Shown here piece by piece: positions 8,357-63,843 of a stretch of DNA of 64,000 bases. The notes beneath the pieces are model-generated. The model was not told the origin of the DNA and did not search any database. It was given only the letters and a program-made list of their open reading frames with translations. This stretch comes from Octopus sinensis (Eukaryota): assembly GCF_006345805.1 (NCBI RefSeq), contig NC_042999.1, forward strand, positions 4,898,001 to 4,962,000, given 5' to 3'. The translations under genes and the position numbers were made by a program. Each line of letters opens with the position of its first letter. Positions within the stretch are counted from its first letter, which is position 1.

Positions 8357-8418
<62 letters not shown>

Positions 8419-9008: not shown

Positions 9009-9062
<54 letters not shown>

Positions 9063-12280: not shown

Positions 12281-12343
<63 letters not shown>

Positions 12344-18104: not shown

Positions 18105-18135
<31 letters not shown>

Positions 18136-28529: not shown

Positions 28530-28787
28530 GGTAACGTGCCCCATTTTAACGTCGAGAAACAAATATGGACGTTGCTTTGAACGGAAACGGACACTGACGT
28601 CATTGACGTTTCCTTACGTCACGACTCGGTGTGACACGTGAGCGTTGCGTTCCGCCAACCCCGTCGCGAGTTCGTCGCCGCCTTCGCCGTCATCGTCGTC
28701 GTTTTAACGAAGTCGTTGGGTGACGTTGGTTTTGAAAAGGAAGAGGAAAAGTAAGAGGAGAGAACAACAGAGAATGGTTGACCTCCT
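28530..28787. promoter_or_regulatory. CpG-rich candidate promoter with CRE/ACGT cluster (left copy)
   Basis: Local CpG enrichment in otherwise AT-rich DNA; TGACGTCA (28595), TGACGT (28604), TTACGTCA (28614), CACGTG (28635); ~7.3 kb 5' of the SAND exon. TSS not determined. Confidence 0.6.
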
Positions 28788-31700
28788 GTACCTAGATCTC
28801 ACCTATACAAACTACCTGTTGAAAACTTCTGCTTAGAATGGAATTAAAGAGTATTGCGAGCTGGCAGAATCGTTAGCATGCCGGGCGAAATGCGTAGCCG
28901 TATTTCGTCTGCCGTTACGTTCTGAGTTCAAATTCCGCCGGGTTCGACTTTGCCTTTCATCCTTTCGGGGTCGATAAATTAAGTACCAGTTATGCACTGA
29001 GGTCGATATAATCGACTTAATCCATTTGTCTGTCCTTGTTTGTCCTCTCTGTCTTTAGCCCCTTGTGGGTAGTAAAGAAATAGGTATTGAATTTTAAAAA
29101 TCAAAAAAAGAATAACCAGGGGAGATAACCCGGACAAGTAATTTATAAAGATTAGTCTCCCCTGGAAGAAGTCTTTTTTTTTTTTAAGTACAAATTAGAA
29201 ATTGTAGGGCTCAAAGTCGAACACTGAAATTATCCAAGTGATGGGAATTCATTCACTCTAGAGGAACTTTAAAATATAAAAAAACAAAAGAGTTAAGTCT
29301 AGATTAGCTTAAATTTGGTTCGGCAGATAGGGATGCTCCCAAAGTGTCCATTGAACGAATTGCTTGTACTATAATGTGCTTAAATGTATAGTTACAACCA
29401 TATGCCCACGTCATTACTGGTTTTACATCGGAACCACGATTCATTTTAAGCAACGCTAACGTGCACACCTGTTAATCTGAAAATTTACCTCGTTTTCTAC
29501 ATCCCTCGCAATCCACATACCCTATAAGGACATACTCTATAATCTGTCCTGTTCCATAGTTTGCAGCGGAATTCCTCGACAGCAGATTGGTGCGTTTGTC
29601 CAGTATGTTGCCACGTACCGCTCACTATATTTCGCCACAACAAGACCTCGAAGCTAAATCGATTCTCTGACATAATTTTTGAATGTTATCACAAATGCTA
29701 CAAAACTTTCTCCAACTACATGAAATCGTCATAATTTTTACTGTACAAACTAGCTTGTCCCTTTACTAACTGGTACTTATTTAATCGACCCCGAAAGAAT
29801 GAAAGGCAAAGTCGACCTCGGCGGAATTTGAACTCAGAACGTAGCGGCAGTCGAAATGTTGTTAAGCATCTCGCCCGGCGTGCTAACGTTTCTGCCAGTT
29901 CGCCGTCTTTCTTCCTTTATAACCTGCTTTCTCCTTAATGACGTTTGCTACTGTTGCCTCTCCTTTTTTCTGTATTGTTTAACAAACTACCTAACAACTC
30001 TAAGGCGAGCACAATAGTCTTTACCTCTCCTCTCTCTGAGTTTCATTCTGCTAATTCCTCTTTAATTTCCCCGCCTCGTTAACCGTTTCTTATCTTCCCT
30101 CGAACATTTTCCTTAGTACCTCTATTATGTTTTCTATAAACCTTTACTTATGAAAATACGACCTTGGAATCTTCCTTCCAATGAAGGTGATCTGCTTAAT
30201 AAATTAATTCGGACCTATGTTATTACACACCCCTAAGACATCATGCACCCTTGTTACATAAGAATGTGTCTACGGCATAAGCCGTGGTGCACATGAAACA
30301 GCTGTCGAGACAAAACGATTACATAACTTCTTCCGTTTACTTCATTCCGTACTCTGTATTTAATATTCCATGTAAATATACATTAAGCCTACTTTATCTG
30401 CCTTTACTGAAAGGAAATGGAAGCAGCGTTAATTCATATCTGAATTTATTTTTTCGTATGCATTGTCCGGGCACATCCACACATAGTTTGCACGTGAACT
30501 GATGAAATGATCCATCTCAGATCCTGTTCGGTTACGTGATGTTGATAAGCCACGAAAATGGCGAAGCATCAATGTCCATCACTCCTGGATGGTATTAGAG
30601 GGGAGTTATCTTGCCTGTCCATAACGTTCAGGTGTTTTAACACCCGGCACTTTGAGAGAGTCTTCTCCACCATGTCAAATCGCAGCCAACCGGTATATAC
30701 GTTAAGTATGTGTGGTTGATAATGTTATTACACTAGCGCTGCTTCTATCTTATATTTGAAACACATGGTTCCGAGTTCAGTCCCACTGCATGATCGTAGC
30801 CTAATGAGTGAACAAGTATAAGATAAAAGAACACACATTTATTCATAGAACCCACTTACTTTCCATTCCCTCTGCCAGCGCATCACCTGACATACCCGGT
30901 TCTCCTAGAAGCCAAAGTATAGGTGTCTACATTGGACCGATTGCGCCCAGAAGAGGCTATCTTTTTACTTGTTTCAGTCATTGGCATGTGGCCATGATAG
31001 AGCACTGCCTTAAAGGGTTTAGTCGATTTAATTAATCTCAGTACTTATTTCTTTTTTCAGGTTTATGTTCATACAAAGGGCTTCTTTCAGTTTCCATCAA
31101 CCCCACCCATTCACAAAGTTTTGGTTGGCCTGAGCCATATCAGAAGATTCTTGTTCAACTAGACGCTTACACTTCGAAATGAAATAATTTAAATAAATTA
31201 AATAAATGTAAAATATGATAAGAGTCGAGCGGTTGTCTGCCCTTGGTAAGTCCTGTGCATGTAAACTTTCTCCAGCACTCTCTATATGACCTGGGAGGGC
31301 CCTTACCCCACTTCCACCGTCAAGTAGATTACTTCCATGACTAGATTTGGGACTAATACTGGAACAGTTTCCTGTTTCCTTCTCCAGTCAGGTGGGATTA
31401 GAACCCAGAATGTAGGCAGCTGGAAGATAACTCATAAAGCATCTCTGCCGACACGCCAACGATTCTACCACTCTCTCACCTGCAGCCTGACATGCTATGA
31501 ACTGTTTTGTTCAAGAACACAACGCGCTGCTCGGTCCGGGAACCGAATCCACTACCTGACGATTGTGATTGCAACACCCTAACTTACGATGCCATTTGTG
31601 CAATCTTTCACTGAAATATGTAAACATCAGCGAGTTTTCAAAAAAGATAAATAACAATAATAAATTGTGTAGTAAGAAACCTACTTCCCGACGACGAGCA

Positions 31701-32577
31701 AGTGTTTTTTACTATAGCCTCGGGCCGACTAAAGCCTTGTGAGTGGAGTTGATAAATGGAAAGTGAAAGAAGTCCGCTGTGTATATCTTACATGTTTGTT
31801 GAGGCGGCGAACTGGCAGAAACGTTAGCACGCCGGGCGAAATGCTTAGCGGTATTTCGTCTGCGTTACGTTGTGAGTTCAAATTCCGCCGAGGTCGACTT
31901 TGCCTTTCATCCTTTCGGCGTCGATAAATTAAGTACCAGTTACACACTGGGATCGATGTAATCGACTTAATCCGCCTATCTGTCCTTGTTTGTCTCCTCT
32001 GTGTTTAGCCCCTTGTGGGTAGTAAAGAAATAGGTATTTCGCCCGTTGCTACGTTCTGGGTTCAAATTTCGCCGAGGTCGACTTTCCCTTTCATCCTTTC
32101 GGGATCGATAAATTAAGTACCAGTTGGGTCCATGTAATCGACTCGCCTCTTCCCCACCCCCAAAAAACTTCAGGCCTTGTGCCTGTAGTAGAAAGGACGA
32201 TTATATGTTTTGCGTGCGTGTGTGTGCGTGCATGTCTTTGTGTCTGCCTGTCTCCCACCGCTCTACAACCGGTGTTGGTTTTTTTGACATCCCCGTAACT
32301 TAGAGGTTCGCAAGAGACCGCTAGAATAAATATTAGGCTTTTAAAAAAATAATTACTGAGATTCATTTATTCGACTAAAAATGAAATGGATTCCGTTGTA
32401 AATCAGAATTGCGTGTGGGATGTTTACTTCTTTCGACGATAACTTTATTTTTATTATCTTTTATCAAACTCGCCGCAAATCAATCAATATTCCTTCAAAA
32501 CCTCAACTTTCCGAAAGAGTTCAATACAGTTTCCACAACGAGGCTAGTCTAGCAAGCACATGACATAGCCGTGTGGT
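28788..32577. other. Spacer between the inverted arms (~3.8 kb)
   Basis: Not mirrored within itself; contains SINE copies and unique sequence; no convincing ORF. Confidence 0.85.
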
Positions 32578-32835
32578 AGGAGGTCAACCATTCTCTGTTG
32601 TTCTCTCCTCTTACTTTTCCTCTTCCTTTTCAAAACCAACGTCACCCAACGACTTCGTTAAAACGACGACGATGACGGCGAAGGCGGCGACGAACTCGCG
32701 ACGGGGTTGGCGGAACGCAACGCTCACGTGTCACACCGAGTCGTGACGTAAGGGAAACGTCAATGACGTCAGTGTCCGTTTCCGTTCAAAGCAACGTCCA
32801 TATTTGTTTCTCGACGTTAAAATGGGGCACGTTAC
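32578..32835. promoter_or_regulatory. CpG-rich candidate promoter with CRE/ACGT cluster (right copy)
   Basis: Mirror of 28530-28787; TGACGTCA at 32764; ~6 kb 5' of the SAND exon. Confidence 0.6.
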
Positions 32836-35800
32836 CGTCTTCAGGCGCAAACCACAATTCTTACCATGCTTTCATCAAACTTTTCCTCTCCTTTAGAACA
32901 CTCTTTCCCTTTTTTTTCTCTCGCCATATTTTCTTTTCTCCCGATTTCTTTCAAAAACGTCGACCTTAAAGAAAAAAAATCAACAACAAAAACTCCACAA
33001 ACAAACAAAAAAAGACACCATTCTCCCTCAAATCTCTTAGAATTTCACGACATTATTTTATAATCACACACAAAATATACCAACACCACTTAACAAAGTA
33101 ATAAATATATGATATAATCGCTTAAATTCCCGCAAAATCGATCGATCGAACTTTGCTAAGTTCTTTCATGACAACGTAACTTTTCCTCTCTCTCCCAACT
33201 GTTGTACGATAATAGTTTCCCCTCTCCTCTGTGTGGGTGGGCACATTTATATATACATATATCTATATCTATATATATATATATGGTCATTGCAGCATTC
33301 CTCTCTCTCTCTCTCTCTGGTCAGTGTTATTGAAGTTATGGAGGCAAGACAATAGAATCAATGATGTACCCACATATATATATTCCTTCCTCCTCTCTAT
33401 ATTATATGTTACCACCCTATTTGGTTTCATCCGTTATTTCCGTCTTCCCCACGAATCCTCACTAATCTCCGTCCCTGCTGCTCACCTGGTTCCTACCTGT
33501 CATACTTTTAATCAAAGGTGGGTATAAAACCAAGTTTTTTCTTTCTTTGTTCTTCATACAACACACACACACACACGCAATTACTATTATTATTATTATT
33601 TATTGTTTGTATTATTTTCCGTTATGTTCTTCTTATTGATACAGCATGCCTTTAATCAAAAAGTCTCTCCATCCATGACCTTCTCGTCGTCGCATATCAA
33701 ATAATAATAATTTCCGATTTAGGGACAAGGGCCTCAGTTTTCAGGGATGCTGGTGGGGGGGATTGATGTCGACGTCGGTGGAGTTCGAACTGGGAACGTA
33801 AAGACCCGGAGGTAACACTGCGAGGCTCTAAACGGATTCTGCAGGTTCGCCACCTTAGTAATAATAATAATAATAACAATAATTCTTTCTACGAATAGAC
33901 AAGGCCTGAAATTTTATGGGGAGGTGGTTCGTGGATTAGATCGATCCCAGGACTTGACTGTTACTTATTTAATCGACCCATGGAAGACAAAATGTTAGTC
34001 TGGGATTTGATCTGGGAACGTAAAGAACTGCAACAAATATCGCTCAGCATTTTCCCCACCCCCCGGGGCTTTAGAACACAACTCGTCGGAAAAGGATGAA
34101 AGGTGATGGTAGGAGCAAAAGAACCGCAATAAGTCAAGTAAAGACAGCAATTATACTCGTATAGTCCACAAAAATACTTGAATAGTTCACAATAAAATAC
34201 GTTATTCGGTGTCCTACGGTAAGTGTTTCGTTTGAGGGAGATTTAGCTACTCTTTTGTAGCAGGTAGTCACCCCGAACGCACCCGTATGTCATCGACCTG
34301 TGCTTTGCGAACGTGATCTTTCTTTACTAAACACATTTAGAGAATTTTTTGGTTATATTTGGCTCTTAAAACTTTTGTCTAGATATATTTTTATAACAAC
34401 AATAATAATTCGTTCTGATCTTGGCACAAATCCAACAATTTCCAGAAAAGGGGACAGATGGGGACAGCTGGTTACACCGACCCCAGGACTTGACCGCTAT
34501 TTCATTTTATCGTCCCGGAAAGGACGAAAGGCAGAGTTGTGGAACAACAACAACAACAATAAATGTGCAAGCAAGCACTTGTTACCTTCACACCTATCAT
34601 GGAATTTAGAGAACTCTTCTTCTGCCTAGAGTTGTGTTTTCTTCCTGTCTGCTTCCTCACCGAGGAATGAGAAATAACAGTTGTTATTTCTAACACAGGC
34701 AGAAGGCCAGATTTTTTTCTTTTTTTTTTCTTTTGCAGCAAAGGTAGCAGTTGTTTATAGCACTTTATTTTATTGACCCAGAAAGTAGGGAAAAAAACAA
34801 TTTTGAGACATGGGCTGGATTTGAACATAAAAAAGCAGAATAAACTACCGGAGAGTAACCGTAAGGGTCAAACTAAAGCTTTTGACCCGGTCATAAAAAC
34901 AAAAAAAAGAAAATTATAAAAGTGATAATAATTTCAACTGGCAACAAAAGACCGTATTTTAACGTGTATAAGGAACCCCCTAATTTTGTGGTTCTTAAAA
35001 TTTGGAGAAAAAAAAAGGATTATAATACTATCCATGTGTAAGAAACTCTCATATTTTTTTAAACCTAAGTTTTGACAAAAATATGTTCCTTATACACGTT
35101 AAAATACGGTAATATGTTGATATCAGTGCTTTGCTGGAATTTATTTTATGAAAGGCGAAATGCTTAGCAGTATTTCGTCTGTCTTTTATGTTCTGAGTTC
35201 AAATTCCGCCGTGGTCGACTTTGCCTTGTATCCTTTTGGGGTCGATAAGTACCAGTTACGCACTGGAGTCGATCTAAACGACTGGCCCCCTCTCCAAAAA
35301 TTTCAGTCCTTCTGCCTAGATTAGAAAAGATATTTATCTTATGAAACCCTAGAAGGGTGACTGCAAAAAGCCAGCCTTGGTAGTATTTGAACTAAGAACC
35401 AGGGAAAGAGCCAAAAGAAATGCCACTAAGCAATTTGCCTGACATGCTAAAGATTTTTTTGCTAGGTTGCCAATTAAAATAGTACTGTATGCTCTGATGC
35501 AGTACCAGGCTGTGGTTCTCGTGGCTTCTGATCATAATTGATTGGAAGTGTTAACATGTACATGTTTTATCTTGATGTAAAAGATGGGCTACAGCAAATA
35601 TTCTGCTCAATACCACAGATTTGCTTGTCAGCTGCTTAACTGTAACCAGTTGTGCATGTCACTTAATGGCTGATGCTATGTGCATCTCTTATCACAAGCA
35701 GAAATAGTGGGGAAGCCTCATAACCATGTGTTGAGAAGTGTTTCACCCATCATCCTTAACCCTTATTCAGGGATGTTTTAAGCAGGATGAACTCGACCTG

Positions 35801-38794
35801 AAGAAAATTATAACTGGGTTCCACCTGTGAGGTCATGTGCTGCTCATCTTGATATGAGGTCACCATGTCACACACATGGTTTTTATGTATGTGCCTGGTG
35901 TATCCTTATCAGATAGTATATAGGGCTTCGTATATTTGTACCTCACCATCACTTTGATGGCATGCATTGCTCTCATCGTCATAATAATTTTTAAATTTTG
36001 GCACAAGGCCAGGAATTTTAGAGATAGAGAATAAATCAATTAAATTGACTCCAAGTTCTTCACTGGTACTTATTATCGACCCCAAAACAAGGATGGGCAG
36101 ATCTTGTATGCTATGTTCCTTTAATGCCCTAAACATTTTTCCCTTGGATATGCTGTGCATCTTTTATACCATCAATTACGGTAATTCCTGTATTGCCATG
36201 TAGTCCAGCACGGTTCTTGCTTCACACTTTCTTTAACTGCATTTTAACAAGTAGCCTGTCTATGTAGTCCTATAAATTTTCAATATAATCAAGATTTTCA
36301 AAGTATTTAGTGAAAAACCTGTAAATTTATGTATTGGTATATAATGTTGGTGTTGACCAATTGAAATTTCATGTAATTAGGTTTCTATTTAAACACTTTT
36401 GATACCAAACCATCTGACATTGCCCCTGGCTTTATGGTACAGACTTCCCATTTTAAAATCATCTTCATTAAAACTTTCCATCAAAATTTCTTGTTAATTT
36501 ATGTTGGAAACATTAATTTAAAAATGACAAAGTTAATTCATTAAATTCTTCGTTATTTAAAAAAATTAATGTGTAAAGTGAAATAATGTATTTCAACAGA
36601 AATGTGGTAACTCAAGGGTCAAATACCTCAGTATTGTCTTAGAAACAAGATTGCTGATTAAATGCATAAAAGGATAAATTGTCTTCATTTAGAGCATGAA
36701 CTAATGTCTTAGGATAACCTCTATGAAGACAGTTAAGCCATTATCATCATTGTCTTTTCTTGTCTTGAGACAGCATTCACCCGGGGTGGGTTCAGCTGGC
36801 TTCATTTATCCTCAATGCTGCATCTCTCACAAACGCTGACCAGACTTGGCGATTTGAGGCTAACGACCGCGTGATCTCCAACCACTCCTTATTCCAGCGG
36901 AGAATGCCGTAGGTTGGGTTCCAGATCAGCCTTGACTGTCATCAGCCAGGTTTTACGTTGTCCACCACATCACTTTCGCTAACCCTGAAGGGGAGCTCTG
37001 GGGCAATTGCTTTGTAGATGAATTCTCCTGGTTGACGATGACAGACATGACCCAGCCAACGTCTTATTAGAATGACTTGTCGGAGGGAGGTGATTTTGCA
37101 CTGGTGTCGCACCGAATTGTTGGAGACAAAGTGATGCCATCGGACATGAAAGATGCGGCGTAGACAGAGGTGATCGAAGGATTCTAGTTACTTAATATCT
37201 TCCACCCTCATCGGCCATGACTCACTGCCGTAAAGGAGAATTGTTCGCACTAGGGAACTCATTAGCTTCATTGGTTGAAGTTAATGAGTTGTTTCAGACA
37301 GCAAGCTGGCAGAATTATTAGCTCACTGGTCAAAATGCTTAGCACCATTTCATTCGTCTTTATATTCTAAGTTGAAGTTGGTTGAAAAAAGAAATAGCAG
37401 TTATGCACTGGGGAGGTTGATGTGATCGACCTGACCCTCCCTTGTGTCAAAATTTGAAACTGAATTTAATGGGTTGTTTGTTGTGGAAGGGTATCCAGCT
37501 GTAGAAATCATGCCGAAGCATACACTGGAACACAGCACAGTCCTCTGGCTAGTTGGGTGGTCCTGTCAAGCCATCCAATCCATGCCAATATCCAGGGTAT
37601 CCACCCTCCCCCAATGTACTCTTTAAATGACAATAAATGCATTGTTGATTGTCTTAGAAACAAGATTGATGGTTAAATGCATAAAAGGATAAATCAACTT
37701 CATTTAGAGCATGGTTTAATGTTCACATGTAACATTTCCAACGGACTCCCTTCAAAATGCGACGGGTGCTTGATTTAGGGATTCCGCTCTCATGAGTCAT
37801 TTGTCATACAAAAACTTGTGGGGAACAGTGAAGGGTTTCCAGCAATTCTTTTTCCTTTAGGACAATTCCTTTTCTCTTACTTTCTTGGATGTTCCTTATG
37901 GATGTCATGCACAGTTCCATCTGATTCAAACTTATCTTGGATGCGAGCAGTGTTGCATTGCACTGGTGGATCTTTCTGAAAATCACTTCAAATTGTCTTA
38001 GCACTTCCACGATGTTTCAATGCTTCCAAGTCGCACTTTTTCATGAATTTTCTCTTTCAAATCTTTGTCATACTTCTGCCATTATTAGGATCAATTTGAT
38101 CCAAAAAGAAATGAAAAATCCAGTGAGTTATGGAGAGTCAAAATGCAAGTACATTTTTTTGGCACACCCTGTAGAAGACAGACATTAAATGATGATGATG
38201 ATGATCCATTTGATTGAAATCGCATTCAATATTTCATTGCAGCCTAAAATGGCGAGCTGACAGAATTGTTAGCACAGCAGGCAAAATGCATAATGGTATT
38301 TTGTATATTAAAGCAGCGAGCTGGCAGAAACGTTAACGCACCTGGCTAAATACTTAGCAGTATTTCGTCTGTCTTTACATTCTGAGTTCAAATTCCACCG
38401 AAGTTGACTTTGCCTTTCATCCTTTCGGGGTCAATAAATTAAGTACCAGTTACGCACTGGGGTCGATGTAATCAACTTAATCCGTCTGTCTGTCCTTGTT
38501 TGTCCTCTCTGTGTTTAGCCCCTTGTGGGTAGTAAAGAAATAGGTATTTTGTTTGTCTTTATGTGCTGAGTTTAAATTTTGCTGAGGTTTTGCCTTTTAA
38601 ACTTTTGTGATTGACTTTGCCTTTCTTCCTTTCAATAAAATGAGTACAGGGGTTGTCATTGACTTGCCCAGTCCCACCAAATTGCTGGCCCTGTACCAAA
38701 ATTTGACAGCAATGCTTCATTGCAGCCTATTGAAAATGTATTTATCTAACAGCTTCTACTTGTTATCTTAGTAAAATTCAATTCTCTCTTACAG

Positions 38795-39006
38795 ATGACC
38801 GAAGATAGTGCAGGGGTGATAACAGTCACCTGTGGAAATTTGGTTGGCAAACTACATATGGAGAAATTTATTTGTCCTGGCATTCACCGAGAATGTATTG
38901 AGTTTGAAGGCCGTTTTATCTCTCCGAAACTGTTTTCTGTCATGGGCGAGAAAGAAAAGCTTAAAGACTGGAAGAATGCTGTTCGAATGAATGGCATCCA
39001 ACTCAG
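38795..39006 (+). CDS. GMEB: SAND-domain exon, right GMEB-like copy
   Basis: ttacag|ATG...CTCAG|gtat; KDWK motif; 4 nt differences from the left copy (one Y/F change). Confidence 0.9.
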
Positions 39007-40862: not shown

Positions 40863-40893
<31 letters not shown>

Positions 40894-49800: not shown

Positions 49801-50327
49801 AGGGGGGGGGGGTGATTCAAGCTGTTATTGTGGTAATTAAAAAGAAAAATTTGTTTGTCTTTAAATAAAACCTCTTTAACAACCACTTTGAGCGTCTTTT
49901 TGAGCTCCATGTGTCTAACACATGTAGGCATGTCTACAAAGTCAGTAAACAGCTCAGCTCCCACGACTTTTGAAAACATTTTTTCACACTCAGAGTTGCT
50001 GAAGAATGAAACAAACTACCTGCTTCAGTTGTTAGTTGCTGAGACATTGCATCCTTTATTATGGATGTAAAACAAATGGACGGGGACACACACACACACA
50101 CATACATAATATATTTAGATCAAATTTACAGAAAACAAAAGACAAAGACAGGTAAAGGAACAATAAGCAGGTATATTAGTTTAATGCTCAGAACGAATGG
50201 AAAAGTTGTTGACATTTCGAGCCTATGCTCTTTGACAGAAAGGATTAAGAGGAGAAAAAATATGTAGGGATTAACGGTTCAACATGATGAAATGGCTGGA
50301 AGAAAGGGCCTGAAAAAAAATATACAT

Positions 50328-50360
<33 letters not shown>

Positions 50361-53022: not shown

Positions 53023-53126
53023 TATATATTATATATATATATATATTATATATATATGTATATATATATATATATATGTATTATATATATATATATGTAT
53101 ATATATGTATATATATATATATATAT

Positions 53127-53218
<92 letters not shown>

Positions 53219-53302
53219 ATATATATGTATATATATATATATATATATATGTGTATATATATATATAATATATATATGTGTATATATATATATATATATG
53301 TG

Positions 53303-53342
<40 letters not shown>

Positions 53343-53347
53343 TATAG

Positions 53348-53381
<34 letters not shown>

Positions 53382-53400
53382 GTGGGCTTCTTTCAGTTTC
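53023..53400. repeat. Imperfect (TA)n microsatellite, ~380 bp, inside a SINE
   Basis: Directly visible; the mirror tract at ~8990-9058 is only ~70 bp. Confidence 0.95.
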
Positions 53401-53953
53401 CGTCTACCAAATCCACTCACAAGGCTTTGGTCGGCCCAAGGCTATAGTAAAAGACACTTGTCCAAGGTGCCACGCAGTGGGACTGAACCTGGAACCATGT
53501 GGTTGGTAAGTAAGCCACTTACCACACAGCCGCTCCTGCGCCTCCGTACCATAAACATTTATTTTCAATGTTTATAAAAGTATTTAAAAATCTAGTGAAT
53601 ATTTGACAGAATGTCAGAGACAATGATTTAAAATAAATCAAAGTATTGATTTTTAGCAGATTTTTTATCTATTTAAATAGATATTTAAATTTTCTTTCTA
53701 ATTAAACATGAAGTAGGCTTAATAAATTGGAATTTTTAAGTTGGTATCCTCTGAGAATTTTTATGTAATTAAGCAGTTCACCTTAACGAATGAACTTGTT
53801 AATTTAGGATGACAGGATTTCAAAGAAAAATTATTTCCTAAATTGATTCATATTTCATCCCTTTCTAAATTATTGGGTAACTTCATTCGAAGTCACTATT
53901 CACTTCACTCATTACATCATTTATTAATTTTAAGAGAGACATTTACTTGAACT

Positions 53954-53992
<39 letters not shown>

Positions 53993-56287
53993 CGACTGGC
54001 AAATGTTTGTTGACACAAATGAAATAACTTAATTTCTGAAATAAATTGAATCTCAGTATCACTTGCTATCCATTTAATCTTTCCAGCACTCAGTAAAAAT
54101 AACATTTTCATGGAAATTTCAGATGTTATGTTAATACTCATAGCATTTCTTTCAGCAATTTCACTTTCTTTTAATAATAGCCCAGTGAGATCTTTTATCT
54201 TTTACTTGTTTCAGTCAAGTCTGGCCATGAAGAATTTTCCAGTCAAATGAATTGGACCCACCACTTATTTTGTTTTAGAGCCTAGTACTTATTCTATTGT
54301 TCTCTTTTGCTGAACCACTAAGTTACAGGGACATAAACACACCAACATCAGTTGTCAATTGGTAGTGGCGACAAAAACACACACAAACACAATATATCTG
54401 GTACGTACACACATATATATATAGTTATGTGTTTGTGTCTGTCTGTCCTCCACTCACTACTTGATAACCAGTGTTGGTTTGTTTATATCCCCATAACTTA
54501 GTGATTCAGAAAAAAGGTTCATAGAATAAGTACTAGGCTTATCATGTGTGCGTGCGTGTCTGTTTGTCCCCCACCCCTGCATGACAACTGGTATTGGGGT
54601 GTTTACGCATCCCAGAACTTAACAGTTCGGCAAAAGAGACTGATAGAATAAATACCAAGTTTTTAAAAAATAGGTACCAGGGTCAATTCACTTAACTAAA
54701 ATTCTTTAAGGTGGTTGCCCCAGCATGGCCACAGTTGTAATGACTGAAACAAGGGAAAGATATAAAATGACTGAGTTACTTTTTGAAAATATGTCTTCAC
54801 ATAGAGCAAATGAATCATCATTTAACGTCTGTATTCCATGCTGGCATGGGTTAGACAGTTTGACAGGATCCAGTGTGTCCAAGGACTGTATCATTCATTT
54901 TTTACTTGTTTTAGTCACTAGACACACTGTCATTAATATATACATACATATATATATATATATATATATTTAGCAAAGAAATAACCTAAAAGATAGTGGT
55001 TTTAGCAAAGAAATAACCTATACACCTGTCACTAGCCCAAAGATCATCTGGTTCACACCTCCCTACTCACCCGAGGTGACCTTCAATATAGGCAAATATT
55101 TCTTAGCACTGATAGATAGACATTTTCCAGTCAACCATACTTACAGGAAGCTCTTCAGTAAACACAACTTTAAACCACCATCTTTTAGGTTATTTCTTCA
55201 CTAAAACCTGTATGCGGGTATGTATGTAAAACGGTCTTTTTCCATAGCTTTTTGCCGATGGCCGGATAACTGAAGAGATGGTGGTGTGGATTTCCACCTC
55301 AGCATCCGAAACTCAGAGTTTTATCTTGGCTACCGAATATTTGTCACATATTATATTATATGTGTGTGTGTGTGTGTGTACTTAAAAGTTTACAGATTTT
55401 TGATTGAATTTAGAGCCAGAACTGAAAGTTATGATGTTTTGTATACAAATACATCTATGTGAGCAATGTGATTGAAGTTAGAAAAATAGGTATTGGGTGT
55501 AGATGCACATTTCAGAAGTTATTGCTCCTTCTTCAGTGTTTAATATATAAATTGTTCTATCCAATAGTGTTATACCGCTAAACTTGGTGGGTATTTTAGC
55601 AATGTATTCATGGATAGTTAATGGGTTGCATGTGGTGCTGACGAGGGAACAATAACTCTTGAAACATGCATGTCTGCCCTTAACCCATTTTTCTGTCTTT
55701 GATCACATTGTTTACATAGATGTCTTCATATATAAAATGTTGTAACTTTCAATGCTGGCTCTGGGTTGTATACAAAATCTGGAGAGAGAAAATTAAAAAT
55801 GAAAACAATGCACTGCTAACACAAAAGCAGGACATAATATTGACTTATAAACCCTTAATGTATTTGCTAGCATCCAATAGTTGCAAAACAAAACACTGTG
55901 TCCTTACTAGCAATAAACACACAAACACACACACACACACATATATATATACATATATATACAGGGTTGGCCAAAAGTTACCTGACAGTAAACTAAAAGC
56001 ATTTAATTCCAAGATTAAAACAAAAAAAATATTTTATATGAGACTAAGAAATAGACAAATGTTGGAGGAAAAGAAAAAACAGTGATTTTAACTCACAGCA
56101 TTCATAATTGGAATGAATAAATAAGATTGAATATTAACTCTTCTGATACCAACCTGGCTGAAACTGGCTCTGGCTCTGTAGTACAGATGTCTTGTTTTCA
56201 TAAGTTCTGAATTAAAATCTTCCACCAAACCTTAGTCACAATTTATGTTCCTAGCACTAGCTGAATGATAACTAAATTATTTGTTAT

Positions 56288-56819
56288 CATCATCATCGTT
56301 TAGCATCCGCTTTCCATGCTAGCATGGGTTGGATGGTTCAACTGGGGTCTGGGAAACCAGAAGGCTGCACCAGGCCCAGTTTGATCTGGCAATGTTTCTA
56401 CGGCTGGATGCCCTTCCTAACACCAACCACTTCGTGAGTGTAGTGGGTGCTTTTTACGTGCCACCGGCGCAGGTGCCAGACGAGTCTGGCAAACGGCCAT
56501 GATCGGATGGTGCTTTTTATGTGCCACCAGCACGGGGGCCAGGCGAGGCTGGCAATGGCCACGAACGGATGGTGCTTTTTACGTGCCACCGGCACAAGGA
56601 CAGTCAGGGCGGCGCTGGCAACGGCCACGAACGGATGGTGCTTTTTACGTGCCAGTCGGGGCGGCGCTGGCAATGGCCACGTTCGGATGGTTCTCTTACG
56701 TGCCACCGGCACTGGTAACTCAGCTGCAATTTCCATTGATCGATTTCGATTCTGATTCTCACTTGCCTCAACAGGTCTTCACAAGTAGAGTTTTGTGTCC
56801 CAAGAAGGGAAGGTATGCA
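56288..56819 (-). mobile_element. RTE 3'-end retro-insertion, right arm only
   Basis: 7-bp TSD TTGTTAT (56281-56287 and 56820-56826); the left arm has the single empty site (~6088). Confidence 0.88.
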
Positions 56820-57528
56820 TTGTTATATTTATAATTAATTAAAAGAAACACAGAGAATCTCAACAGGGTTAAGTATTCATGGAATTTTGATTTACTGTCT
56901 GGTTACTTTTGGCCAACCCTGTATTTATTTTTATTTATATATATATATATATATAACTCCAAGAAAGTTAGAGGCTGTGAATCCAACCCACTAAGGGATA
57001 ATATCTATCCAATATACTGCTGGTAGAATACCCAGTTATTAATACACAAGTGTTTTTTATTGCATTGCAATTACATTACCGAGTGTACTAAATGGGTGAA
57101 GATAAAGAGATATTTTACCATTAATTTATAAAGCAATAAGAAAATGGAGGGGATCAATAGGTGGTTCATCAACTTTTAGACATTATATTATGTCAATTTA
57201 TTTATTTATTTACTAAACTGATAATTACAATAATATACATACATATAACATTATGCTTTACATATATATATATACTCTTTATCTTATATTAAACTTTTTA
57301 ATACTTTTTGATAATTATATTTATTAAAAAAAAATAAAATTAAAAAAATAATAATAATAAAAATAATATATATATATATATATAAGTATAAATCAATAAT
57401 TTAAATAATTTTTAAAACTTTAACTTTAAATAATTTAAATTTTGAACATTATATTAATTATTTTTATTTCTGTGTATTGGTTTATGTTTTTCACTGTTTG
57501 ATTTGCCTAATAGTGGTTTTATCTCTAA

Positions 57529-57915
57529 CTAGCAGTATCGCCTGGCGTTGCTCGGGTTTGTAAGGGAAATAACTATAAAGCACTTTTAGAGAGTTATAGC
57601 CAAAAAATAGCAAAAAAAATTGGGAAAAAAATTATGGTAAATTTTTTTTTGATAGTTAAAAAGGCCGAGTTGCGTCCCCTACACCATCTGCGGTTTGCGT
57701 TTCTGATTGTCGACCCCATGTCGAATTTATCGATCTTTTTCTGAACTGGGGGAACTTTTCAAAATTTTCGCTGCGTTAGTTTTGAATTATGACATTGGGC
57801 TATGTGTGTGTCAAGTTTCATCAGAATCGGTTGAAAGCCGTGGTCAGAGTGAGGGTACAAACAAACAGACACACAGAAACACGCACAGACAAACTGCCGT
57901 TTATATAGAGAGAGA
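57529..57915 (-). mobile_element. Non-autonomous Helitron, right arm only
   Basis: Minus strand A|TCTCTC...GCTAG|T, i.e. TC/CTAG ends in an AT target with no TSD; absent at left ~5410. Confidence 0.75.
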
Positions 57916-60900
57916 TTTAAAATATATATATATCTATATATATATATAATGGATTTTCCTGTTGAAGATGACTTATGAGTGTAGTGTTCAGCTGTGTGCT
58001 GAATGACCTGCACCAAAGGGTTTGTTTATTGTGGTCAAATGTATGAGCTGTCCATCAGCTCACTCCCTACATCAAATCAATTTAGCCTGAACAGGTGCAT
58101 GGTGTACCACGCACCAGGTGTTGAAGTGATCACAGAGCAGAGTGAGACGAAGTGAACACAACCCACCGCCTGGTCTAGGAACTGAAACCATGATCTTGAG
58201 ATTGTGAGCACAACACTCTAACCACTAGGCACCCATGCACCTTTACATATATGTGTGTGTGTGTGTGTGTTACTGCTGGTAGGGACACAGTATTTTGTTT
58301 TGCAACCATAATATACAACCAAATATATTAAAGGTTTATCAGTCAATACTGTAATTTACAGAGAGAGAGAGAGAGAGGTAATGGTGTCAGTAAGACCCAA
58401 AGGGGTCAGGTAATGCTGAGTAAGGGCTATGGACAGACCATAGTTAGGCTCCAGGTTTGGTCATTGTGCGAATAAGGAGTCCAACGTAGGTCATATATCA
58501 GCATGTGTGTATATAAAAATCGTTTTTTTCAGAATGAGATAAAAAACCAAGGCTGTGAAGATTTTAGAACATTTATAAATAGGATAGATACACACATATA
58601 TATTCATGGTCAGATCAATAAGTATTCAGACTGTTGCCATAGTAACGAAGCTAAAGCACCGCAGAATGAAGCCGTTTGGCACAGATTGACCTTCGACTCT
58701 GCTGGTGCATGTGCACTAACTTTTAACATTCTAGCTCACTTCTGCTGTTTACAGCAGTGCTTGGAAGGAAGGTGTGTAGCGTGGGATCATTGAATTGACC
58801 ATGACAGAAAGTTGAGCAGAGAATCTGCATCAAATTCTGACAAAAGCTTGACAATATCTGCTCAGAGGTCTGTGCAAAGTTTTCAAAAAGTTTTCCTCAT
58901 TCTTGACACAATCGAGATCTTGTCCAACTGAAACCCGAGTGTCTTTTTGGTCAGCTGAAAGCAGTTTTGGCACAAACTTTGCAAACACATGTCTCATACC
59001 TAAATCTTGATTGATAATGAACTGAACTGAACCGTCACTAATCTGCACATCCTCTGATGACTCATGGATGGTGATTCAACAATTTCCCCTCACAACTGCA
59101 TTCACATCTGTGATGTTTTTCTCTGTTCTGCTGGTTGTGGGTCTCCCAGAATGTTCATCAATATTGACATTTTTTCGGCCTTCTTGGAAATGTCCAAACC
59201 ACTCGTACACTTGTGTGCAACTTTGTACAGACCTCTGAGCACGTATCGCCATGACAACTTTCTCTGTCATGGTCAATGCAACGATCAAACGCTACACACC
59301 TTCCTTCAAAGCACTGCTGTAAACAGAAGAAATGAGCTAGAACATTAAAACTTAGTGTGCGCATGCACAACAGAGTGCAAGGTCAATCTTTGCCAAGCAG
59401 ATCCACTCTGTGTGCTTTAGCTTTGTTTCCATGGCAACAGTCTGGATACTTATTGATCAGACCTCGTATTTATCTTTGTATGTGGATATGATGTGTATGT
59501 TTACCTATATATATATAAAATATACTACAAATATAGGATCTCTTCAGATTAAAATCTCACAGATTAAAAATTTTTTTAACTAAACAGTTTTAAGCTTTGT
59601 ATGCTGGTTTGATTTCTCACACTGAACATGGTTTGCTTTCAACATTTGTGACAAAATTTCACATTGTAGAAGTTATTTCGTGTTAAAGTTGTCTTATTTG
59701 GGTTATTTTAACCAATCAACAACTGAAGAAAACCTCTGCTGTTTGTGACTGTAATCAAAGAACAACAACTTTTGAGTCGTCTCTACTAAATGTCACCAAC
59801 TCTGTTCTATTTTATTCTTGTTTATTGTTTGTGTTGCATATTACAGGCCTTTTTTTTTTTTGCTTTTTGATTTTGTCCAACCCATGGAAAGCGGACGTTA
59901 AACAATGATGATGATGATTGCCTCTTTCTATGTGTGGTGAAAATGTAAATGTACAAAGAGGCGATTGAAAAGCAAACAAAACGTGTAGTATGCAACACAG
60001 GCAGTAAACAAAAATAAAATGCAACAGATGGTGAAAATAATCGCAAAATTAACTGGCAAATGTACAAGGAGGCGATCGCAAAAAAACACAAAGGGTGTGA
60101 TATGCAACACAGGCAGGAAACAAGTGGTGACATTTAGTAGAGATGACCTGCAAGGTGTTGTTCTTTGATTACTATTGCAAACAGCAGTAGTTTTCTTCAG
60201 CTGAATACATGTCGTTGATTGGTTAAAATTACCCAAATATGACAACTTCTAAAATATGAAATTTTGTCAAAAATGTTGAAAGTAAACCGTGTTCAGCATG
60301 AGAAATTACACCAGTATACAAAGTTTCAAACCGTTTAGTTAAAAAAAAAAAAAATCGATCACTCCAAGTATAGAGTTTGTACACAGTGTTATTGAATTGA
60401 GGATTTTATTTAAATAAAACCCTCAATTCAATAACATTGTATACAAACTCTTATACTTGGAATGACCAATTTTAAATACTATTGGAACTTACAAGGTATT
60501 GGAATCTTATATGTATACCATTCTGCCTAAAAAATGGATTTACAGGTGTGAGTGAAACTAAAGAGATCCTAAATATAATTTTTTCTTTGTTGTTTCAGCT
60601 CAGAGCTGTGGCCATGCTGGAGCACCACCGTTTTATTACACTGTTATTACTGAGAGCTTTCTCTAATATTTGGCATTTGGTGAAGAATGGAGTTTGATGT
60701 AGATAGCCTCATTTGCACCTCTTGCCGTGAGGTAGGTTCATCTGGGACTCTCGACAGGAAGAGGTCCAGCTTTGATTTTAAAATGCCTACATCTGCTTTG
60801 TGCAGGTTCCTCAGACTCTTTGGGAGAATATTAAAAAGCTGTGGGTCCCTGAAACCCAGGCTGTTGCAGTAACTGGTCCTGAAGCGCGATGGCATTGCTG

Positions 60901-63006
60901 GGATCTTTGGCACCGTGCAGTGTCAACCTGTTCTGGCATTGGTGTAACTTTCAATACCAAAATTTGGCACAAATCCTTCCAGATGTATATTACTGCATAC
61001 CTCTCCTACCTTTGCTCCGAAGAGTAGAGTCTTAGCTGTTTCAGCCTTTCCTAGTAGCTGAGCTGTTGCAAAGAGACAATCTTTTTTGTGAAGCTTCACT
61101 GGATTGCTTCAAGGTCCGCTGTTAACTTTACATTGTTAGGTGACCATAGGTGGGAGAAATAATCCAGGTGGCTGATGACGAATGTCCTCCAGAGGACCAT
61201 CATGGTTTCCTTATTTCTGGTTCTGAATGTAATATAAGATAAGATAATATAACCAATTTTCACAAATTTAACCAGATAAAGCCAATAATTTGTTTTGACT
61301 TATATACATTATTTGATTTATAAACAATTCATATCTATGTATACATGTTTCTTCAGACCCTTGGTTCCAAAAGACAGACGAAATTCCATGTAAAAGGACT
61401 GCTAAATTGTAAAATAATACTGATTCAAAATACCTATGTTTAGGGGCGTGAGTGTTAACAATTCTAAACATAAATACAACAAAAAAACAAAATTCAAATG
61501 GATAAATTAATTCTTTCATTCATTTACTTGTTTCAGTCATTTGACTGTGACCATGCTGGAGCACCGCCTTTAGTCAAGCAAATCAACCCCAGAGCTTATT
61601 CTTTGTAAGCTTAGTACTTATTCTATTGGTCTCTTTTGCCAAATTGCTAAGTTACGGGGACATAAACATACCATCGGTTGTTAAGCAATGTTGGGGAGAC
61701 AAACACAGACACAAACATATACACACTCACACATATATATACACATATACAACTGGCTTCTTCCAGATTCCATCTACCAAATCCACTCACAAGGCTTTGG
61801 TAGACCCGATGCCATAGTAGAAGACACCTGCCCGAGGTGCCATACAGTGGGGCTATGACCATGTGGTTGGTAAGCAAGCTACTTACCACACAGCCACTCC
61901 TGCATCTAACTGAGTAAAGAAAATTTATAACAGTCAAAAATGTTATAGATCTCCAATAAATGTATTTAAATCGAAAGGCATCACAGCCATTTTAATGATA
62001 TATAATAATAATATGTAAACATATTAGCAAATAAAGTATCAATGTTTTACTTAGTTTTATTGATGGATTAATCGTGTAGATCCATCATCATCATTGTTTA
62101 ATGTCCGCTTTCCATGCTAGCATGAGTTGGATGAATTGACTGAGGACTGGCGAACCAGATGGCTGCACCTGGCTCCTATCTGATCTGGTAGATGGATGCC
62201 CTTCCTAACGCCAACCACTCCGAGAATGTAGTGGGTGCTTTTACATGCCACTGGCACAAGGGCCAGTCAGGTGGTACTGGCAATGGCCATGCTCAAATGG
62301 TGTTTTTTTATGTGCCACCTGCACAGGAGCCAGTCCAGCGGCACATTATCTAGGATGCAGTGTTTTTTTTTTTATTCATTTATTTTCCAAATTTGAATGT
62401 GATGCAGTCACAGCCCTGTTGTTAAGAAGTTTGGTCCACAATCACAAAGTTCTGGGTTTAGTCTCATCAGTTGGTACATTGGACAAATACTTTTTTCAGG
62501 AAACCTTGGGTCAGTCCCTTGTGAGTCTACTTCGGTGGGTGGAAACTGTGTAGAGCCAATCAAATAATGTATTTTAATTACTATATTACAATGGGTGTAG
62601 TTAAGGCAGTGAGCTAGCAGAAATGTTAGCACACCGGACGAAATGCGTAACCGTATTTCGTCTGCCGTTATGTTGTGAGTTCAAATTCCGCCAAGGTCGA
62701 CTTTGCCTTTCATCCTTTCGGGGTTGATTAAATAAGTACCAGTTACGCACTGGGGTCAATATAATCGACTTTATCCGTTTGTCTGTCCTTGTTTGTCCTC
62801 TCTGTGTTTAACCCCTTGTGGGTAGTAAAGAAATAGGTATTTCATCTGCCTTTACGTTCTGAGTTCAAATTCCGCCGAGGTTGACTTTGCCTTTCATCCT
62901 TTCGGGGTTGATTAAATAAGTACCAGTTACGCACTGGGGTCGATGTAATCGACTTAATCCGTTTGTCCTCTCTGGGTTTAACCCCTTGTGGGTAGTAAAA
63001 GAAATG

Positions 63007-63843
63007 GGTTATAAAGGAAGATAGATAAAAGTAAATAAAGCCGCGGCTGAAGGAGGCGCGTCGGTAAGAGAGAAGGTGAGTGTTAGAGAATTACGATTAG
63101 TAAAGGTGGAAGCTAGTTTGTGCAGTAAAAATTATGACGATTTCATGGAGTTGGAGAAAGTTTCGTAGCATTTGCGATAACATTCAAAAATTATGTCAGA
63201 GAATCGATTTAGCTTAGAGGTCTTGTGGCGAAATATAGTGAGCGGTACGTGGCAACATACTGGACAAACGCACCAATCTGCTGTCCGAGGAATTCCGCTG
63301 CAAACTATGGAACGGGACAGATTATAGAGTATGTCCTTATAGGGTATGTGGATTGCGATGGATGTAGAAAACGAGGTAAATTTTCAGATTAACAGGTGTG
63401 CACGTTAGCGTTGCTTAAAATGAATCGTGGTTCCGATGTAAAACCTGTAATGACGTGGGCATATGGTTGTAACTATACATTTAAGCACATTATGGTACAA
63501 GCAATTCGTTCAATGGACACTTTTGGAGCATCGCTATCTGCCGAATCAAATTTAAGCTAATCTAGACTTAACTCTTTGTTTTTTTAGACTTTTAAGCTCC
63601 TCTAGAGTGAATGAATTCCCATCTCTTGGATAATTTCAGCGTTCGACTTTGAGCCCTACAATTTCTAATTTGTACTTAAAAAAAGACTTCTTCCAGGGGA
63701 GACTAATCTTTATAAACTACTTGTCCGGGTTATCTCCCTTGCTCATTCTTTTTTTTTCTTTGCTTAATTCGATAATTTTTTATTTAATTCTAAGCAGAAG
63801 TTTTCAACAGGTAGGTTGTATAGGTAAGATCTAGGTTACAGGG
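63007..63843 (-). repeat. Inverted copy of 28785-29924 (segment B)
   Basis: For example 63130-63320 is the reverse complement of ~29560-29750, and 63790-63843 of 28785-28837. SINEs at ~28855-29085 and ~29770-29905 are present only in the left copy. Confidence 0.9.

What the first reader, a model, noticed from the sequence alone, without database searches (positions are those of the whole stretch)
28785..63843. Circularly permuted gene duplication: both junctions of the inverted copy map to one 3-bp site
On + the left locus reads A(2015-28787)-B(28785-29924). Read on -, the second copy is B'(63843-63007)-D-A'(61175-32578). A' ends at ...GGTTGACCTCCT (=28787) and B' begins at CCTGTA(A)CCTAGATC (=28785). 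Both ends of the ~31 kb copy therefore map to the same CCT, and AGG is present at both + strand junctions (32578-32580 and ~63840-63842). This AB-to-BA order is the signature of excision as a circle followed by re-integration, here inverted and ~2.7 kb downstream of B, through a 3-bp microhomology or staggered cut. Circular-intermediate duplication is established in a few animals (e.g. cattle KIT, tilapia vasa). A local inverted case generating an intact head-to-head TF pair would be notable.
Basis: partly seen in the sequence, partly recalled or inferred. Interest (0 to 1): 0.9.

Follow-up and report, generated by a model that had tools for sequence, protein, structure and literature searches.

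The report
Permuted inverted duplication of a gene
A roughly 27-kb stretch carrying a GMEB-like transcription-factor gene is present twice, head to head, with a 1-kb neighbouring piece moved to the far end of the second copy; this is a real but known kind of complex duplication, and the sequence alone cannot show that a DNA circle made it.

Summary
A (2015-28787) and A' (61175-32578) are inverted copies. A 1-kb piece, B, follows A on the left but lies beyond the far end of A' on the right. The A' end and the B' start both map to one CCT (28785-28787).

Corrections:
- B' starts at 63842, not 63843.
- The claimed B end (29924/63007) is a SINE target-site duplication, not orthologous sequence.
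- The true far end of B' was erased by a second SINE.

- A 5'-truncated LINE with both copies of its 7-bp target-site duplication runs uninterrupted from D into A' on the right. On the left it is cut at 2015.
- So D is native flank, not filler at a circle-closing junction, and the right copy is the more likely parent.
- On that reading, the left A|B join is a single new junction made through 3-bp microhomology. The "two ends, one site" coincidence disappears.
- A template-switching (MMBIR-like) event explains the structure at least as well as a circle.

B/B' differ by 5.4% and A/A' by 1.9%, with a 2.4-kb perfect tract, which points to arm-to-arm gene conversion.

No outgroup or reads were reachable, so polarity and mechanism stay open. 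The kind is known (human circular-DNA-mediated duplication pairs, cattle KIT).

The parts
1..2014 (.). L: left flank, unrelated to D. It holds a SINE-a (415-815), a TE-b fragment (820-972) and a 26-bp minisatellite (1068-1630). A perfect 22-nt local direct repeat (1952-1973 and 1989-2010) ends 4 nt before the L|A junction.
2015..28787 (-). A: left copy of the duplicated block. It carries a GMEB-like SAND-domain gene on the - strand, with its 5' end near 28.6-28.7 kb. It starts inside a LINE (2015-2610) that lacks its first 55 nt and its 5' target-site duplication.
28785..28787 (+). CCT: the 3 bp shared by the end of A/A' homology and the start of B/B' homology.
28785..29924 (+). B (left). Unique core: 28785-28855 and 29091-29766. 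A SINE inserted after the duplication: 28856-29090 (target-site duplication GTATTG). A 173-bp deletion at 29766/29767 (TAAC/TAAT microhomology). The 5' part of an ancestral SINE: 29767-29909. That SINE's second 15-bp target-site duplication: 29910-29924.
29925..32577 (.). S: single-copy spacer between the two gene heads. It is partly SINE and SINE-a fragments and shows no homology to D, L or R.
32578..61175 (+). A': right copy of the block, with the gene on the + strand. It ends at AGG 32578-32580, the reverse complement of CCT.
61176..61237 (-). The first 55 nt of the LINE (61230->61176; 18 ORF2 codons, TFRTRNKETMMVLWRTFV) and its 5' target-site duplication TTATATT (61237-61231). The 3' copy of the duplication is at 60578-60572. 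This shows that D|A' is native contiguity.
61176..62835 (.). D: sequence present only in the right copy, between A' and B'. It contains the LINE head, about 270 nt of unique sequence, a SINE-a (61511-61904), 178 nt unique, TE-b (62083-62344), 143 nt unique, and a long SINE2 (62488-62841).
62836..63842 (-). B' (right). Unique core: 63842-63083. A 62-nt stretch that is deleted in the left copy. The 15-bp target-site duplication: 63021-63007. The 3' part of ancestral SINE1: 63005-62836, truncated by the 3' end of SINE2.
63843..64000 (.). R: right flank. Only 158 nt lie inside the window and they have no match elsewhere in it.
16298..18718 (.). A 2,421-nt tract that is 100% identical to 40280-42700. 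It is a gene-conversion footprint inside arms that otherwise differ by 1-3.4%.

Best explanation
This is a real inverted segmental duplication of a GMEB-like SAND-domain gene, arranged as a head-to-head pair.

Proposed history. The right-hand arrangement, read on the - strand as R-B'-D-A'-S, is the more likely parent. The left copy (A-B) is the derived one. It was built in a single complex replication or repair event from two parental pieces that lie about 1.7 kb apart: A' (28.6 kb) and B' (about 1 kb). Both were copied in inverted orientation and joined in swapped order at a 3-bp CCT microhomology. The product was placed 2.65 kb from the parent's gene head.

Mechanism. I think serial template switching is most likely: an MMBIR/FoSTeS-type fold-back duplication with a templated piece at the junction.

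Later changes:
- SINE and LINE insertions in both copies.
- A 173-bp deletion in the left B.
- A SINE2 event that erased the far end of B'.
- Repeated arm-to-arm gene conversion, which lowered A/A' divergence to 0-3.4%. B/B' is not colinear with the arms, so it kept about 5.4%.

What is shown: the structure, the junction sequences, LINE continuity across D|A', the SINE target-site-duplication logic, the divergence contrast, and intact exons in both copies. What is inferred: the polarity, that a single event was responsible, and the template-switch mechanism.
For: Structure. Junction sequences and the 3-bp overlap.

Polarity:
- The LINE ORF2 frame continues 18 codons into D in the right copy only, and more than 100 LINE homologues align from that point.
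- The TTATATT target-site duplication brackets the LINE at 61237-61231 and 60578-60572. The left copy keeps only the 3' copy of the duplication.
- A perfect 22-nt local direct repeat ends 4 nt from the L|A junction. Such local duplications are typical of replicative junctions.

Locality: the acceptor site is 2.65 kb from the donor and both pieces come from within 31 kb. That fits template switching (Hastings 2009, PMC2621351, and Hermetz 2014, PMC3907307, found). The circle-mediated pairs reported so far lie 0.09-58 Mb apart.

Real duplication with later history:
- Private TE insertions with target-site duplications.
- The 2,421-nt perfect tract has P about 2e-21 under uniform divergence.
- B is 5.4% diverged against 1.7% in the adjoining 1.8 kb of A (Fisher P = 5e-7).

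Gene: Pfam SAND at E about 5e-23 in both copies. The nearest solved structure is the GMEB1 SAND domain, 1OQJ. Four recognisable exons are open in both copies.
Against: - No outgroup, population data or reads were available, so polarity rests on one truncated LINE. A later insertion larger than 2 kb, or a deletion, at 2014/2015 in the left copy would also explain that truncation, and the window starts only 2 kb to the left.
- Under free template switching there is no reason for the small piece to come from just beyond the far end of the large piece, in the order and orientation of an exact circular permutation. That near-complete wrap-around is what a circle predicts.
- A 3-bp microhomology occurs by chance at roughly 5% of blunt joins (my estimate), so it is weak evidence.
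- The other two junctions show 0-1 bp of microhomology.
- Recombination between the 27-kb arms can flip the spacer. So which distal arm was originally linked to the A|B junction is not certain.
Confidence: 0.45

Rival explanations
1. Circular intermediate with the right copy as donor. The interval 32578-63842 (B'-D-A') was copied or excised and closed into a circle by end joining at the CCT microhomology. It was then reopened in or around D with loss of about 1.3-1.8 kb, and inserted in inverted orientation between L and S.
For: - The derived copy is an almost complete circular permutation of one contiguous 31-kb parental interval.
- The single new junction joins the two ends of that interval with 3-bp microhomology, as at the closing junctions of circular-DNA-mediated duplication pairs.
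- LINE continuity fits this polarity.
Against: - The opening is not at a single point. D (at least 1.3 kb) is missing from the derived copy, whereas reported cases show only short indels.
- The B-side end is overwritten by SINE2, so the opening point cannot be defined.
- Re-insertion 2.65 kb from the donor is far closer than any reported case (0.09-58 Mb).
- Nothing in a single sequence separates a circle from a backward template switch.
Confidence: 0.2
2. The left A-B is the parent. A circle carrying A-B, plus some sequence upstream of A, was opened at the CCT and inserted in inverted orientation between S and R.
For: - Both ends of the right-hand unit map to the same 3 bp of a contiguous A-B sequence.
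- The SINE at the B end is more complete on the left, with its 5' end and second target-site duplication present.
Against: - The two ends of the left block (2015 and about 29860-29924) are not joined in the right copy. They are separated by 1.7-1.8 kb of D.
- The part of D next to A' is the native continuation of a LINE with its target-site duplication.
- So the donor must have extended left of 2015, and the left copy must since have lost or been separated from that sequence by an unseen second event. L shows no homology to D.
Confidence: 0.1
3. Several independent events. B/B' is an older duplication (5.4% diverged) and A/A' a younger inverted duplication (at most 3.4%) whose end happens to fall at the edge of B.
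For: Divergence jumps sharply at the junction: 1.7% in the last 1.8 kb of A against 5.4% in B (P = 5e-7).
Against: - Two independent breakpoints would have to coincide within 3 bp.
- The divergence contrast is what gene conversion confined to the colinear arms would produce. The perfect 2.4-kb tract and the patchy 0-3.4% profile support that.
Confidence: 0.12
4. Assembly artefact. Two diverged haplotypes of one locus were mis-joined head to head.
For: - Divergence of 2-5% with TE presence/absence differences is within the range of haplotype differences in highly heterozygous marine invertebrates (my own knowledge).
- A distant relative's assembly also holds this gene on two contigs that are 90-97% identical.
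Against: - The window has no N gaps.
- The two copies have different unique flanks (L, S, D, R) with no mutual homology.
- The permuted position of B and a perfect 2.4-kb tract inside otherwise diverged arms are not what a haplotig join gives.
Confidence: 0.08

Closest known systems
Circular-DNA-mediated segmental duplication pairs in the human genome (Chicote et al. 2020, BMC Genomics, PMC7450558). Cattle KIT colour-sidedness translocations via circular intermediates are the classic case (Durkin et al. 2012, from memory).
   Same: Block order is flipped (A-B versus B-A) with both blocks keeping the same relative orientation. The two ends of one copy meet at a single point in the other copy. 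That junction has only a 3-bp microhomology. There is no long homology or transposon ends at the breakpoints.
   Different: Only one of the two diagnostic junctions is clean, because about 1.3-1.8 kb (D) separates the other pair of ends. The copies are 2.65 kb apart and inverted, not 0.09-58 Mb apart. Polarity is not fixed by an outgroup. One end has been overwritten by a later SINE.
MMBIR/FoSTeS complex rearrangements and fold-back inverted duplications with a short single-copy spacer (Hastings et al. 2009, PMC2621351; Hermetz et al. 2014, PMC3907307)
   Same: Inverted arms are separated by a kb-scale single-copy spacer. A second, short templated segment from nearby sits at the junction. Junctions have 0-3 bp of microhomology. 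A small local duplication lies next to one junction. All templates come from within about 31 kb.
   Different: The templated piece is about 1 kb and comes from just beyond the far end of the duplicated arm, so the copy is an almost exact circular permutation. This is a fixed evolutionary duplication in an invertebrate genome, not a human disease CNV. The mechanism cannot be observed here.
Large palindromes homogenised by arm-to-arm gene conversion, such as the primate Y-chromosome palindromes (Rozen et al. 2003, from memory)
   Same: There are 27-kb inverted arms with a short spacer. Identity is patchy and includes a 2.4-kb perfect tract. Divergence in the arms is lower than in the non-colinear piece from the same duplication.
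   Different: The arms are still 1-3% diverged in most places and carry private TE insertions, so homogenisation is much weaker.
GMEB1/GMEB2, SAND-domain (KDWK) transcription factors
   Same: Both copies carry a SAND domain with the KDWK motif, and the best solved match is the GMEB1 SAND domain. C-terminal exons, including a coiled-coil-like exon, follow the SAND exon in the same order as in a related mollusc contig.
   Different: Only some of the exons were identified. The 5' exons and full-length orthology were not established.

Membership tests
Circular-DNA-mediated segmental duplication pair (Chicote 2020 criteria) | Block order is flipped between copies (A-B versus B-A) while both blocks keep the same relative orientation. 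| tested here: met
   Both A/A' and B/B' are inverted. The order on the left is A-B, and on the right, read on the - strand, it is B'-D-A'.
Circular-DNA-mediated segmental duplication pair (Chicote 2020 criteria) | Closing junction: the two ends of the ancestral copy are joined inside the derivative with only microhomology or a short indel. | tested here: inconclusive
Met if the right copy is ancestral: 32578 and 63842 are joined at CCT in the left copy.
Circular-DNA-mediated segmental duplication pair (Chicote 2020 criteria) | Opening point: the two ends of the derivative map to a single point in the ancestral copy. | tested here: inconclusive
Not met if the right copy is ancestral, because the derivative's ends map to 61175 and about 62836, with D between them. 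The B-side end is also obscured by SINE2. So in either polarity one of the two junction criteria fails.
Circular-DNA-mediated segmental duplication pair (Chicote 2020 criteria) | Ancestral and derivative copies are assigned from an outgroup that lacks the derivative and shows the empty acceptor site. | not testable with these tools
   No close relative is in the reachable collections. The best SAND-exon hits are 74% and 61% identical, an exact ORF look-up found nothing, noncoding sequence of the relative cannot be aligned, and the junction 24-mer scan gave 0 hits.
MMBIR / fold-back type inverted duplication | Inverted arms separated by a short single-copy spacer. | tested here: met
   The spacer is 2,653 nt (S), or 3,790 nt if B is counted with it, between 27-kb arms.
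MMBIR / fold-back type inverted duplication | Breakpoint junctions have microhomology and complexity, such as templated insertions from nearby sequence. | tested here: met
   There is a 3-bp CCT overlap at A|B. B itself is a piece of about 1 kb whose template lies 31 kb away. A 22-nt local direct repeat ends 4 nt from L|A. The other junctions have 0-1 bp of microhomology.
MMBIR / fold-back type inverted duplication | Origin in a single replicative event. | not testable with these tools
   This needs intermediate alleles, an outgroup or experimental systems.
   The core of B has exactly two copies in 64 kb, while SINE, SINE-a and TE-b families have 5-20. The ends of the unit show no terminal inverted repeat (read directly). 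Genome-wide copy number could not be checked.
SAND-domain (GMEB-like) transcription factor | A SAND domain with the KDWK motif. | tested here: met
   Pfam PF01342 at E = 4.7e-23 and 6.3e-23, above the curated cut-off, in both copies. The best solved structure is GMEB1, 1OQJ, at E = 1.3e-14. KDWK is present in both copies.
Palindrome with arm-to-arm gene conversion | Identity between arms is patchy, with long perfect tracts beyond what uniform divergence allows. | tested here: met
   One-kb bins range from 0 to 3.4% mismatch. A 2,421-nt perfect tract has P about 2e-21 at the mean rate.

The most novel reading that the evidence does not exclude
The permuted copy really did pass through an extrachromosomal or looped circular DNA of about 31 kb, closed at a 3-bp microhomology and re-inserted inverted only 2.65 kb from its source. 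That would have created an intact head-to-head pair of GMEB-like transcription-factor genes in a mollusc. It would be the most local circle-mediated gene duplication on record, and the first in an invertebrate.
Probability: 0.25. Interest if true: 0.55.

Novelty: new member of a known kind. Interest (0 to 1): 0.3.

Why it matters
If the polarity and mechanism could be fixed, this locus would be a compact, base-resolved example of how one complex event makes a divergent (head-to-head) pair of transcription-factor paralogues. The two copies share a promoter-proximal region of only about 100-190 bp. Their upstream contexts differ: B on one side and the far end of S on the other.

The locus also shows how arm-to-arm gene conversion can make a duplication look two to three times younger than its non-colinear fragment indicates.

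As it stands, it adds one case to a class already described in mammals. It also carries a caution. The 'both ends map to one site' signature is symmetric: it becomes a single ordinary microhomology junction once the polarity is reversed. So by itself it cannot diagnose a circle.

Tried and rejected
- Outgroup or empty-site test. The SAND exon found only a Lottia protein (61%) and an unnamed ENA assembly (74%). An exact ORF look-up found nothing. The relative's contigs align to the window only in exons. A metagenome scan for the 24-mer at the A end gave 0 hits. So there is no outgroup.
- Empty-site joins. I joined S|R, L|S and B|A in a script and searched for any repeat copy spanning a join. 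None did, so the test is uninformative.
- Hidden homology of D's unique parts or R to L or S. Smith-Waterman scores were at shuffle level. The best position-consistent hit, between the start of S and D after the SINEs, is not real homology when aligned.
- Word-based protein search with the LINE fragment found no candidates. The exhaustive HMMER search did work.
- Species identification through cluster names returned no names.
- B as a transposon: rejected within the window, since there are two copies and no terminal repeats.
- Tandem duplication followed by inversion as a two-step route: I worked through it and rejected it, because it needs three copies of B or extra deletions.
- Using identity to decide whether the left SINE fragment and the right SINE1 are orthologous: uninformative, because 92.3% is matched or beaten by other copies. 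The orthology rests instead on the shared 15-bp target-site duplication and on position.
- Using amino-acid states shared with the relative to polarise the two gene copies: the signal is mixed.

Full report
**What is there**

The window is eukaryotic, intron-rich and TE-rich, with about 40% GC and no Ns. Self-comparison shows a large inverted duplication. A (2015-28787) matches A' (61175-32578) in nine colinear blocks. TE-sized insertions private to one copy interrupt the blocks:
- left only: 19968-21022 and 23667-24985
- right only: 56287-56820 and 47022-48338
- a remodelled stretch at 10418-11386 (left) against 51669-48920 (right)

Over 23,538 aligned columns the arms differ at 1.95% of sites. 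The difference is very uneven, from 0 to 3.4% per kb, and 16298-18718 is 100% identical to 40280-42700. At the mean rate, a perfect tract of 2,421 nt has a probability of about 2e-21. The arms have therefore exchanged sequence by gene conversion.

**The gene**

The block carries a SAND-domain gene.
- Pfam PF01342 scores E about 5e-23 in both copies.
- The nearest solved structure is the GMEB1 SAND domain, 1OQJ.
- Exon order against a distant mollusc contig puts the gene on the - strand in A and the + strand in A'.
- Four recognisable exons and the coiled-coil-like exon are open in both copies. The copies differ by several amino acids in the C-terminal exons.
- The organism looks like a mollusc. 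The best hits are an unnamed ENA assembly at 74% and Lottia gigantea at 61%. It could not be named.

**The permuted piece**

To the right of A, the left locus continues into B. B has a second, inverted copy beyond the far end of A'. The matches are 28785-28854 with 63842-63772, and 29103-29784 with 63755-63083.

At base level:
- left: ggttgacctCCTgtacctagatc
- A' end, read on the - strand: ggttgacctCCT|accacacggc
- B' start, read on the - strand: gtacgtaaatac|CCTgtaacctagatc

So A/A' homology ends, and B/B' homology begins, on the same CCT (28785-28787). On the + strand this is AGG at 32578-32580 and 63840-63842.

The core of B has only these two copies in the window. True dispersed families here have 5-20 copies.

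**Corrections to the anatomy**

1. The left B carries a SINE at 28856-29090 with a GTATTG target-site duplication. It is absent on the right, so it inserted after the duplication.

2. On the left it lies just after the 5' end of a SINE in the same orientation (29910-29924). It is therefore the target-site duplication of one ancestral SINE.
- The left copy has since lost 173 bp between two TAA(C/T) microhomologies at 29766/29767.
- The right copy's SINE is truncated at about its position 45 by the complete 3' end of a second SINE (62841-62488).
- Orthologous B homology therefore runs to about 29860 / 62836. Its true far end has been erased by a later event in the right copy.

3. D (61176-62835) is not filler.
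- The duplicated block starts inside a 5'-truncated LINE.
- In the right copy the LINE ORF2 frame runs 18 codons (55 nt) past the boundary into D: TFRTRNKETMMVLWRTFV|ISHLDYFSHLWSP.
- An exhaustive HMMER search found 3,419 LINE ORF2 relatives. Most of the 150 listed align from exactly that point, and full-length proteins read TFRARDQETMLTLWRTYV|LSHMDY there.
- The LINE is bracketed by a TTATATT target-site duplication, at 61237-61231 and after its A-rich tail at 60578-60572.
- In the left copy the LINE is cut at 2015. The upstream sequence is unrelated, and only the 3' copy of the duplication remains (2611-2617).
- A perfect 22-nt local direct repeat ends 4 nt before that junction.
- The rest of D is SINE-a, TE-b, the long SINE2 and about 600 nt of unique sequence. 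None of it matches L or S.

**What this means for polarity**

D|A' is native contiguity, and L|A (2014/2015) is a derived break.

The simplest reading is that the right-hand arrangement (R-B'-D-A'-S on the - strand) is the parent and the left A-B is the copy. On that reading, the two ends of the parental interval (32578 and 63842) were joined once, in the left copy, through 3 bp of microhomology.

The donor must originally have extended left of 2015, and a later insertion or deletion larger than 2 kb must then have separated that sequence from the left copy. This cannot be excluded, because the window starts only 2 kb to the left. It is, however, one extra event with no trace in the data.

The B-side end gives no polarity signal, because the SINE2 event is needed in every model.

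A further caution applies. Crossing-over between the 27-kb arms inverts the spacer. So which distal arm was originally attached to the A|B junction is not fixed.

**Mechanism**

I compared the locus with the explicit criteria for circular-DNA-mediated duplication pairs (Chicote et al. 2020, PMC7450558).
- The order flip is present.
- In either polarity only one of the two diagnostic junctions is clean. The other pair of ends is separated by 1.3-1.8 kb.
- The reported circle-mediated pairs lie 0.09-58 Mb apart. Here the acceptor site is 2.65 kb from the donor and the copy is inverted.

These features are the usual setting for replication-based template switching: inverted arms around a kb-scale single-copy spacer, a second short templated segment at the junction, 0-3 bp of microhomology, and a small local duplication at one junction (Hastings 2009, PMC2621351; Hermetz 2014, PMC3907307).

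Against pure template switching: the small piece comes from just beyond the far end of the large piece, in the order and orientation of an exact wrap-around. A circle or loop predicts that outcome. Free switching merely allows it.

My estimates:
- about 0.45 for a single template-switch type event with the right copy as parent
- about 0.2 for a circle with the same polarity
- about 0.12 for separate events
- about 0.08 for an assembly artefact

**Divergence**

B/B' differ at 41 of 754 sites (5.4%). The adjoining 1.8 kb of A differs at 1.7% (Fisher P = 5e-7), and the most diverged clean stretch of A at 3.4% (P = 0.02).

This could mean that B is older. That would leave the 3-bp coincidence of breakpoints unexplained. 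The more economical reading is that conversion homogenises only the colinear arms. B' is not colinear, so it keeps the true age of the event.

**What could not be done**

No close relative, population sample or read set is reachable. So the empty-site test, the junction-support test and the genome-wide copy number of B remain open.

**Verdict**

The circle interpretation is possible, but it is not required and is probably mis-polarised. The class of event is already known. Interest is moderate to low until an outgroup or reads are available.

Noticed in passing
window 1068-1630: A 26-bp minisatellite (consensus AGGTGCTTTTTACATGGTGCGGGCCC) with 21.7 copies at 96% identity lies in the left flank about 400 nt from the L|A junction. 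Because of the repeat it gives long spurious ORFs in three frames.
   Followed up: partly
window 1952-1973 and 1989-2010: A perfect 22-nt direct repeat (ggtacccatggggcagaagata) with a 37-nt period ends 4 nt before the L|A breakpoint at 2015. This could be a local templated duplication made when the junction formed.
   Followed up: partly
window 16298-18718 and 40280-42700: A 2,421-nt tract is 100% identical between the arms and includes the polyQ exon, while neighbouring kilobases differ by 1-3%. It is a recent gene-conversion tract, so the two paralogues are not evolving independently along their whole length.
   Followed up: yes
window 53000-53400 versus 8990-9060: An AT/GT-rich microsatellite inside an orthologous SINE-a has expanded by about 330 nt in the right copy only, into a complex array with 8-12-nt periods.
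   Followed up: no
window 24064-24873 (- strand): A left-copy-only insertion (23667-24985) carries a 270-codon open frame resembling the C-terminal part of a LINE ORF2. The frame begins with a weak PHD/C1-like zinc-finger match, below the Pfam cut-off.
   Followed up: partly
window 60600-60640 / 2560-2600 and 61540-61590: The 3' end of the LINE at the start of A (…ggtgctccagcatggccacagc…ctgaaacaa…) closely resembles the 3' end of the roughly 400-nt SINE-a family (…ggtgctccagcatggtcacagtcaaatgactgaaacaag…). This suggests a LINE-SINE partner pair that shares a tail.
   Followed up: no
window 12068-12196 / 46793-46921, 10833-10988 / 49570-49725 and 9987-10367 / 51720-52091: The C-terminal exons of the two paralogues differ at many amino acids (5 of 43 in one exon, 4 of about 43 in the next) and by an in-frame 3-codon indel in the last exon. 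The SAND exon differs by one residue and the polyQ exon by none. The protein divergence is uneven, and dN/dS was not analysed.
   Followed up: partly
L001 (1-12372) and L002 (1-20216), ENA assembly ERZ25069853: The only moderately close relative in the collections also carries this gene on two contigs that are 90-97% identical, with TE-sized indels. One contig starts just 2.1 kb upstream of the SAND exon. These may be haplotigs, or the gene may be duplicated in that species too.
   Followed up: partly
window 28600-28720 and 32645-32765: A CpG-rich stretch with several TGACGT (CRE-like) motifs lies 70-190 nt inside the end of A in both copies. It is the likely promoter, and the breakpoint falls just upstream of it, so the two paralogues share only the core promoter.
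   Followed up: no
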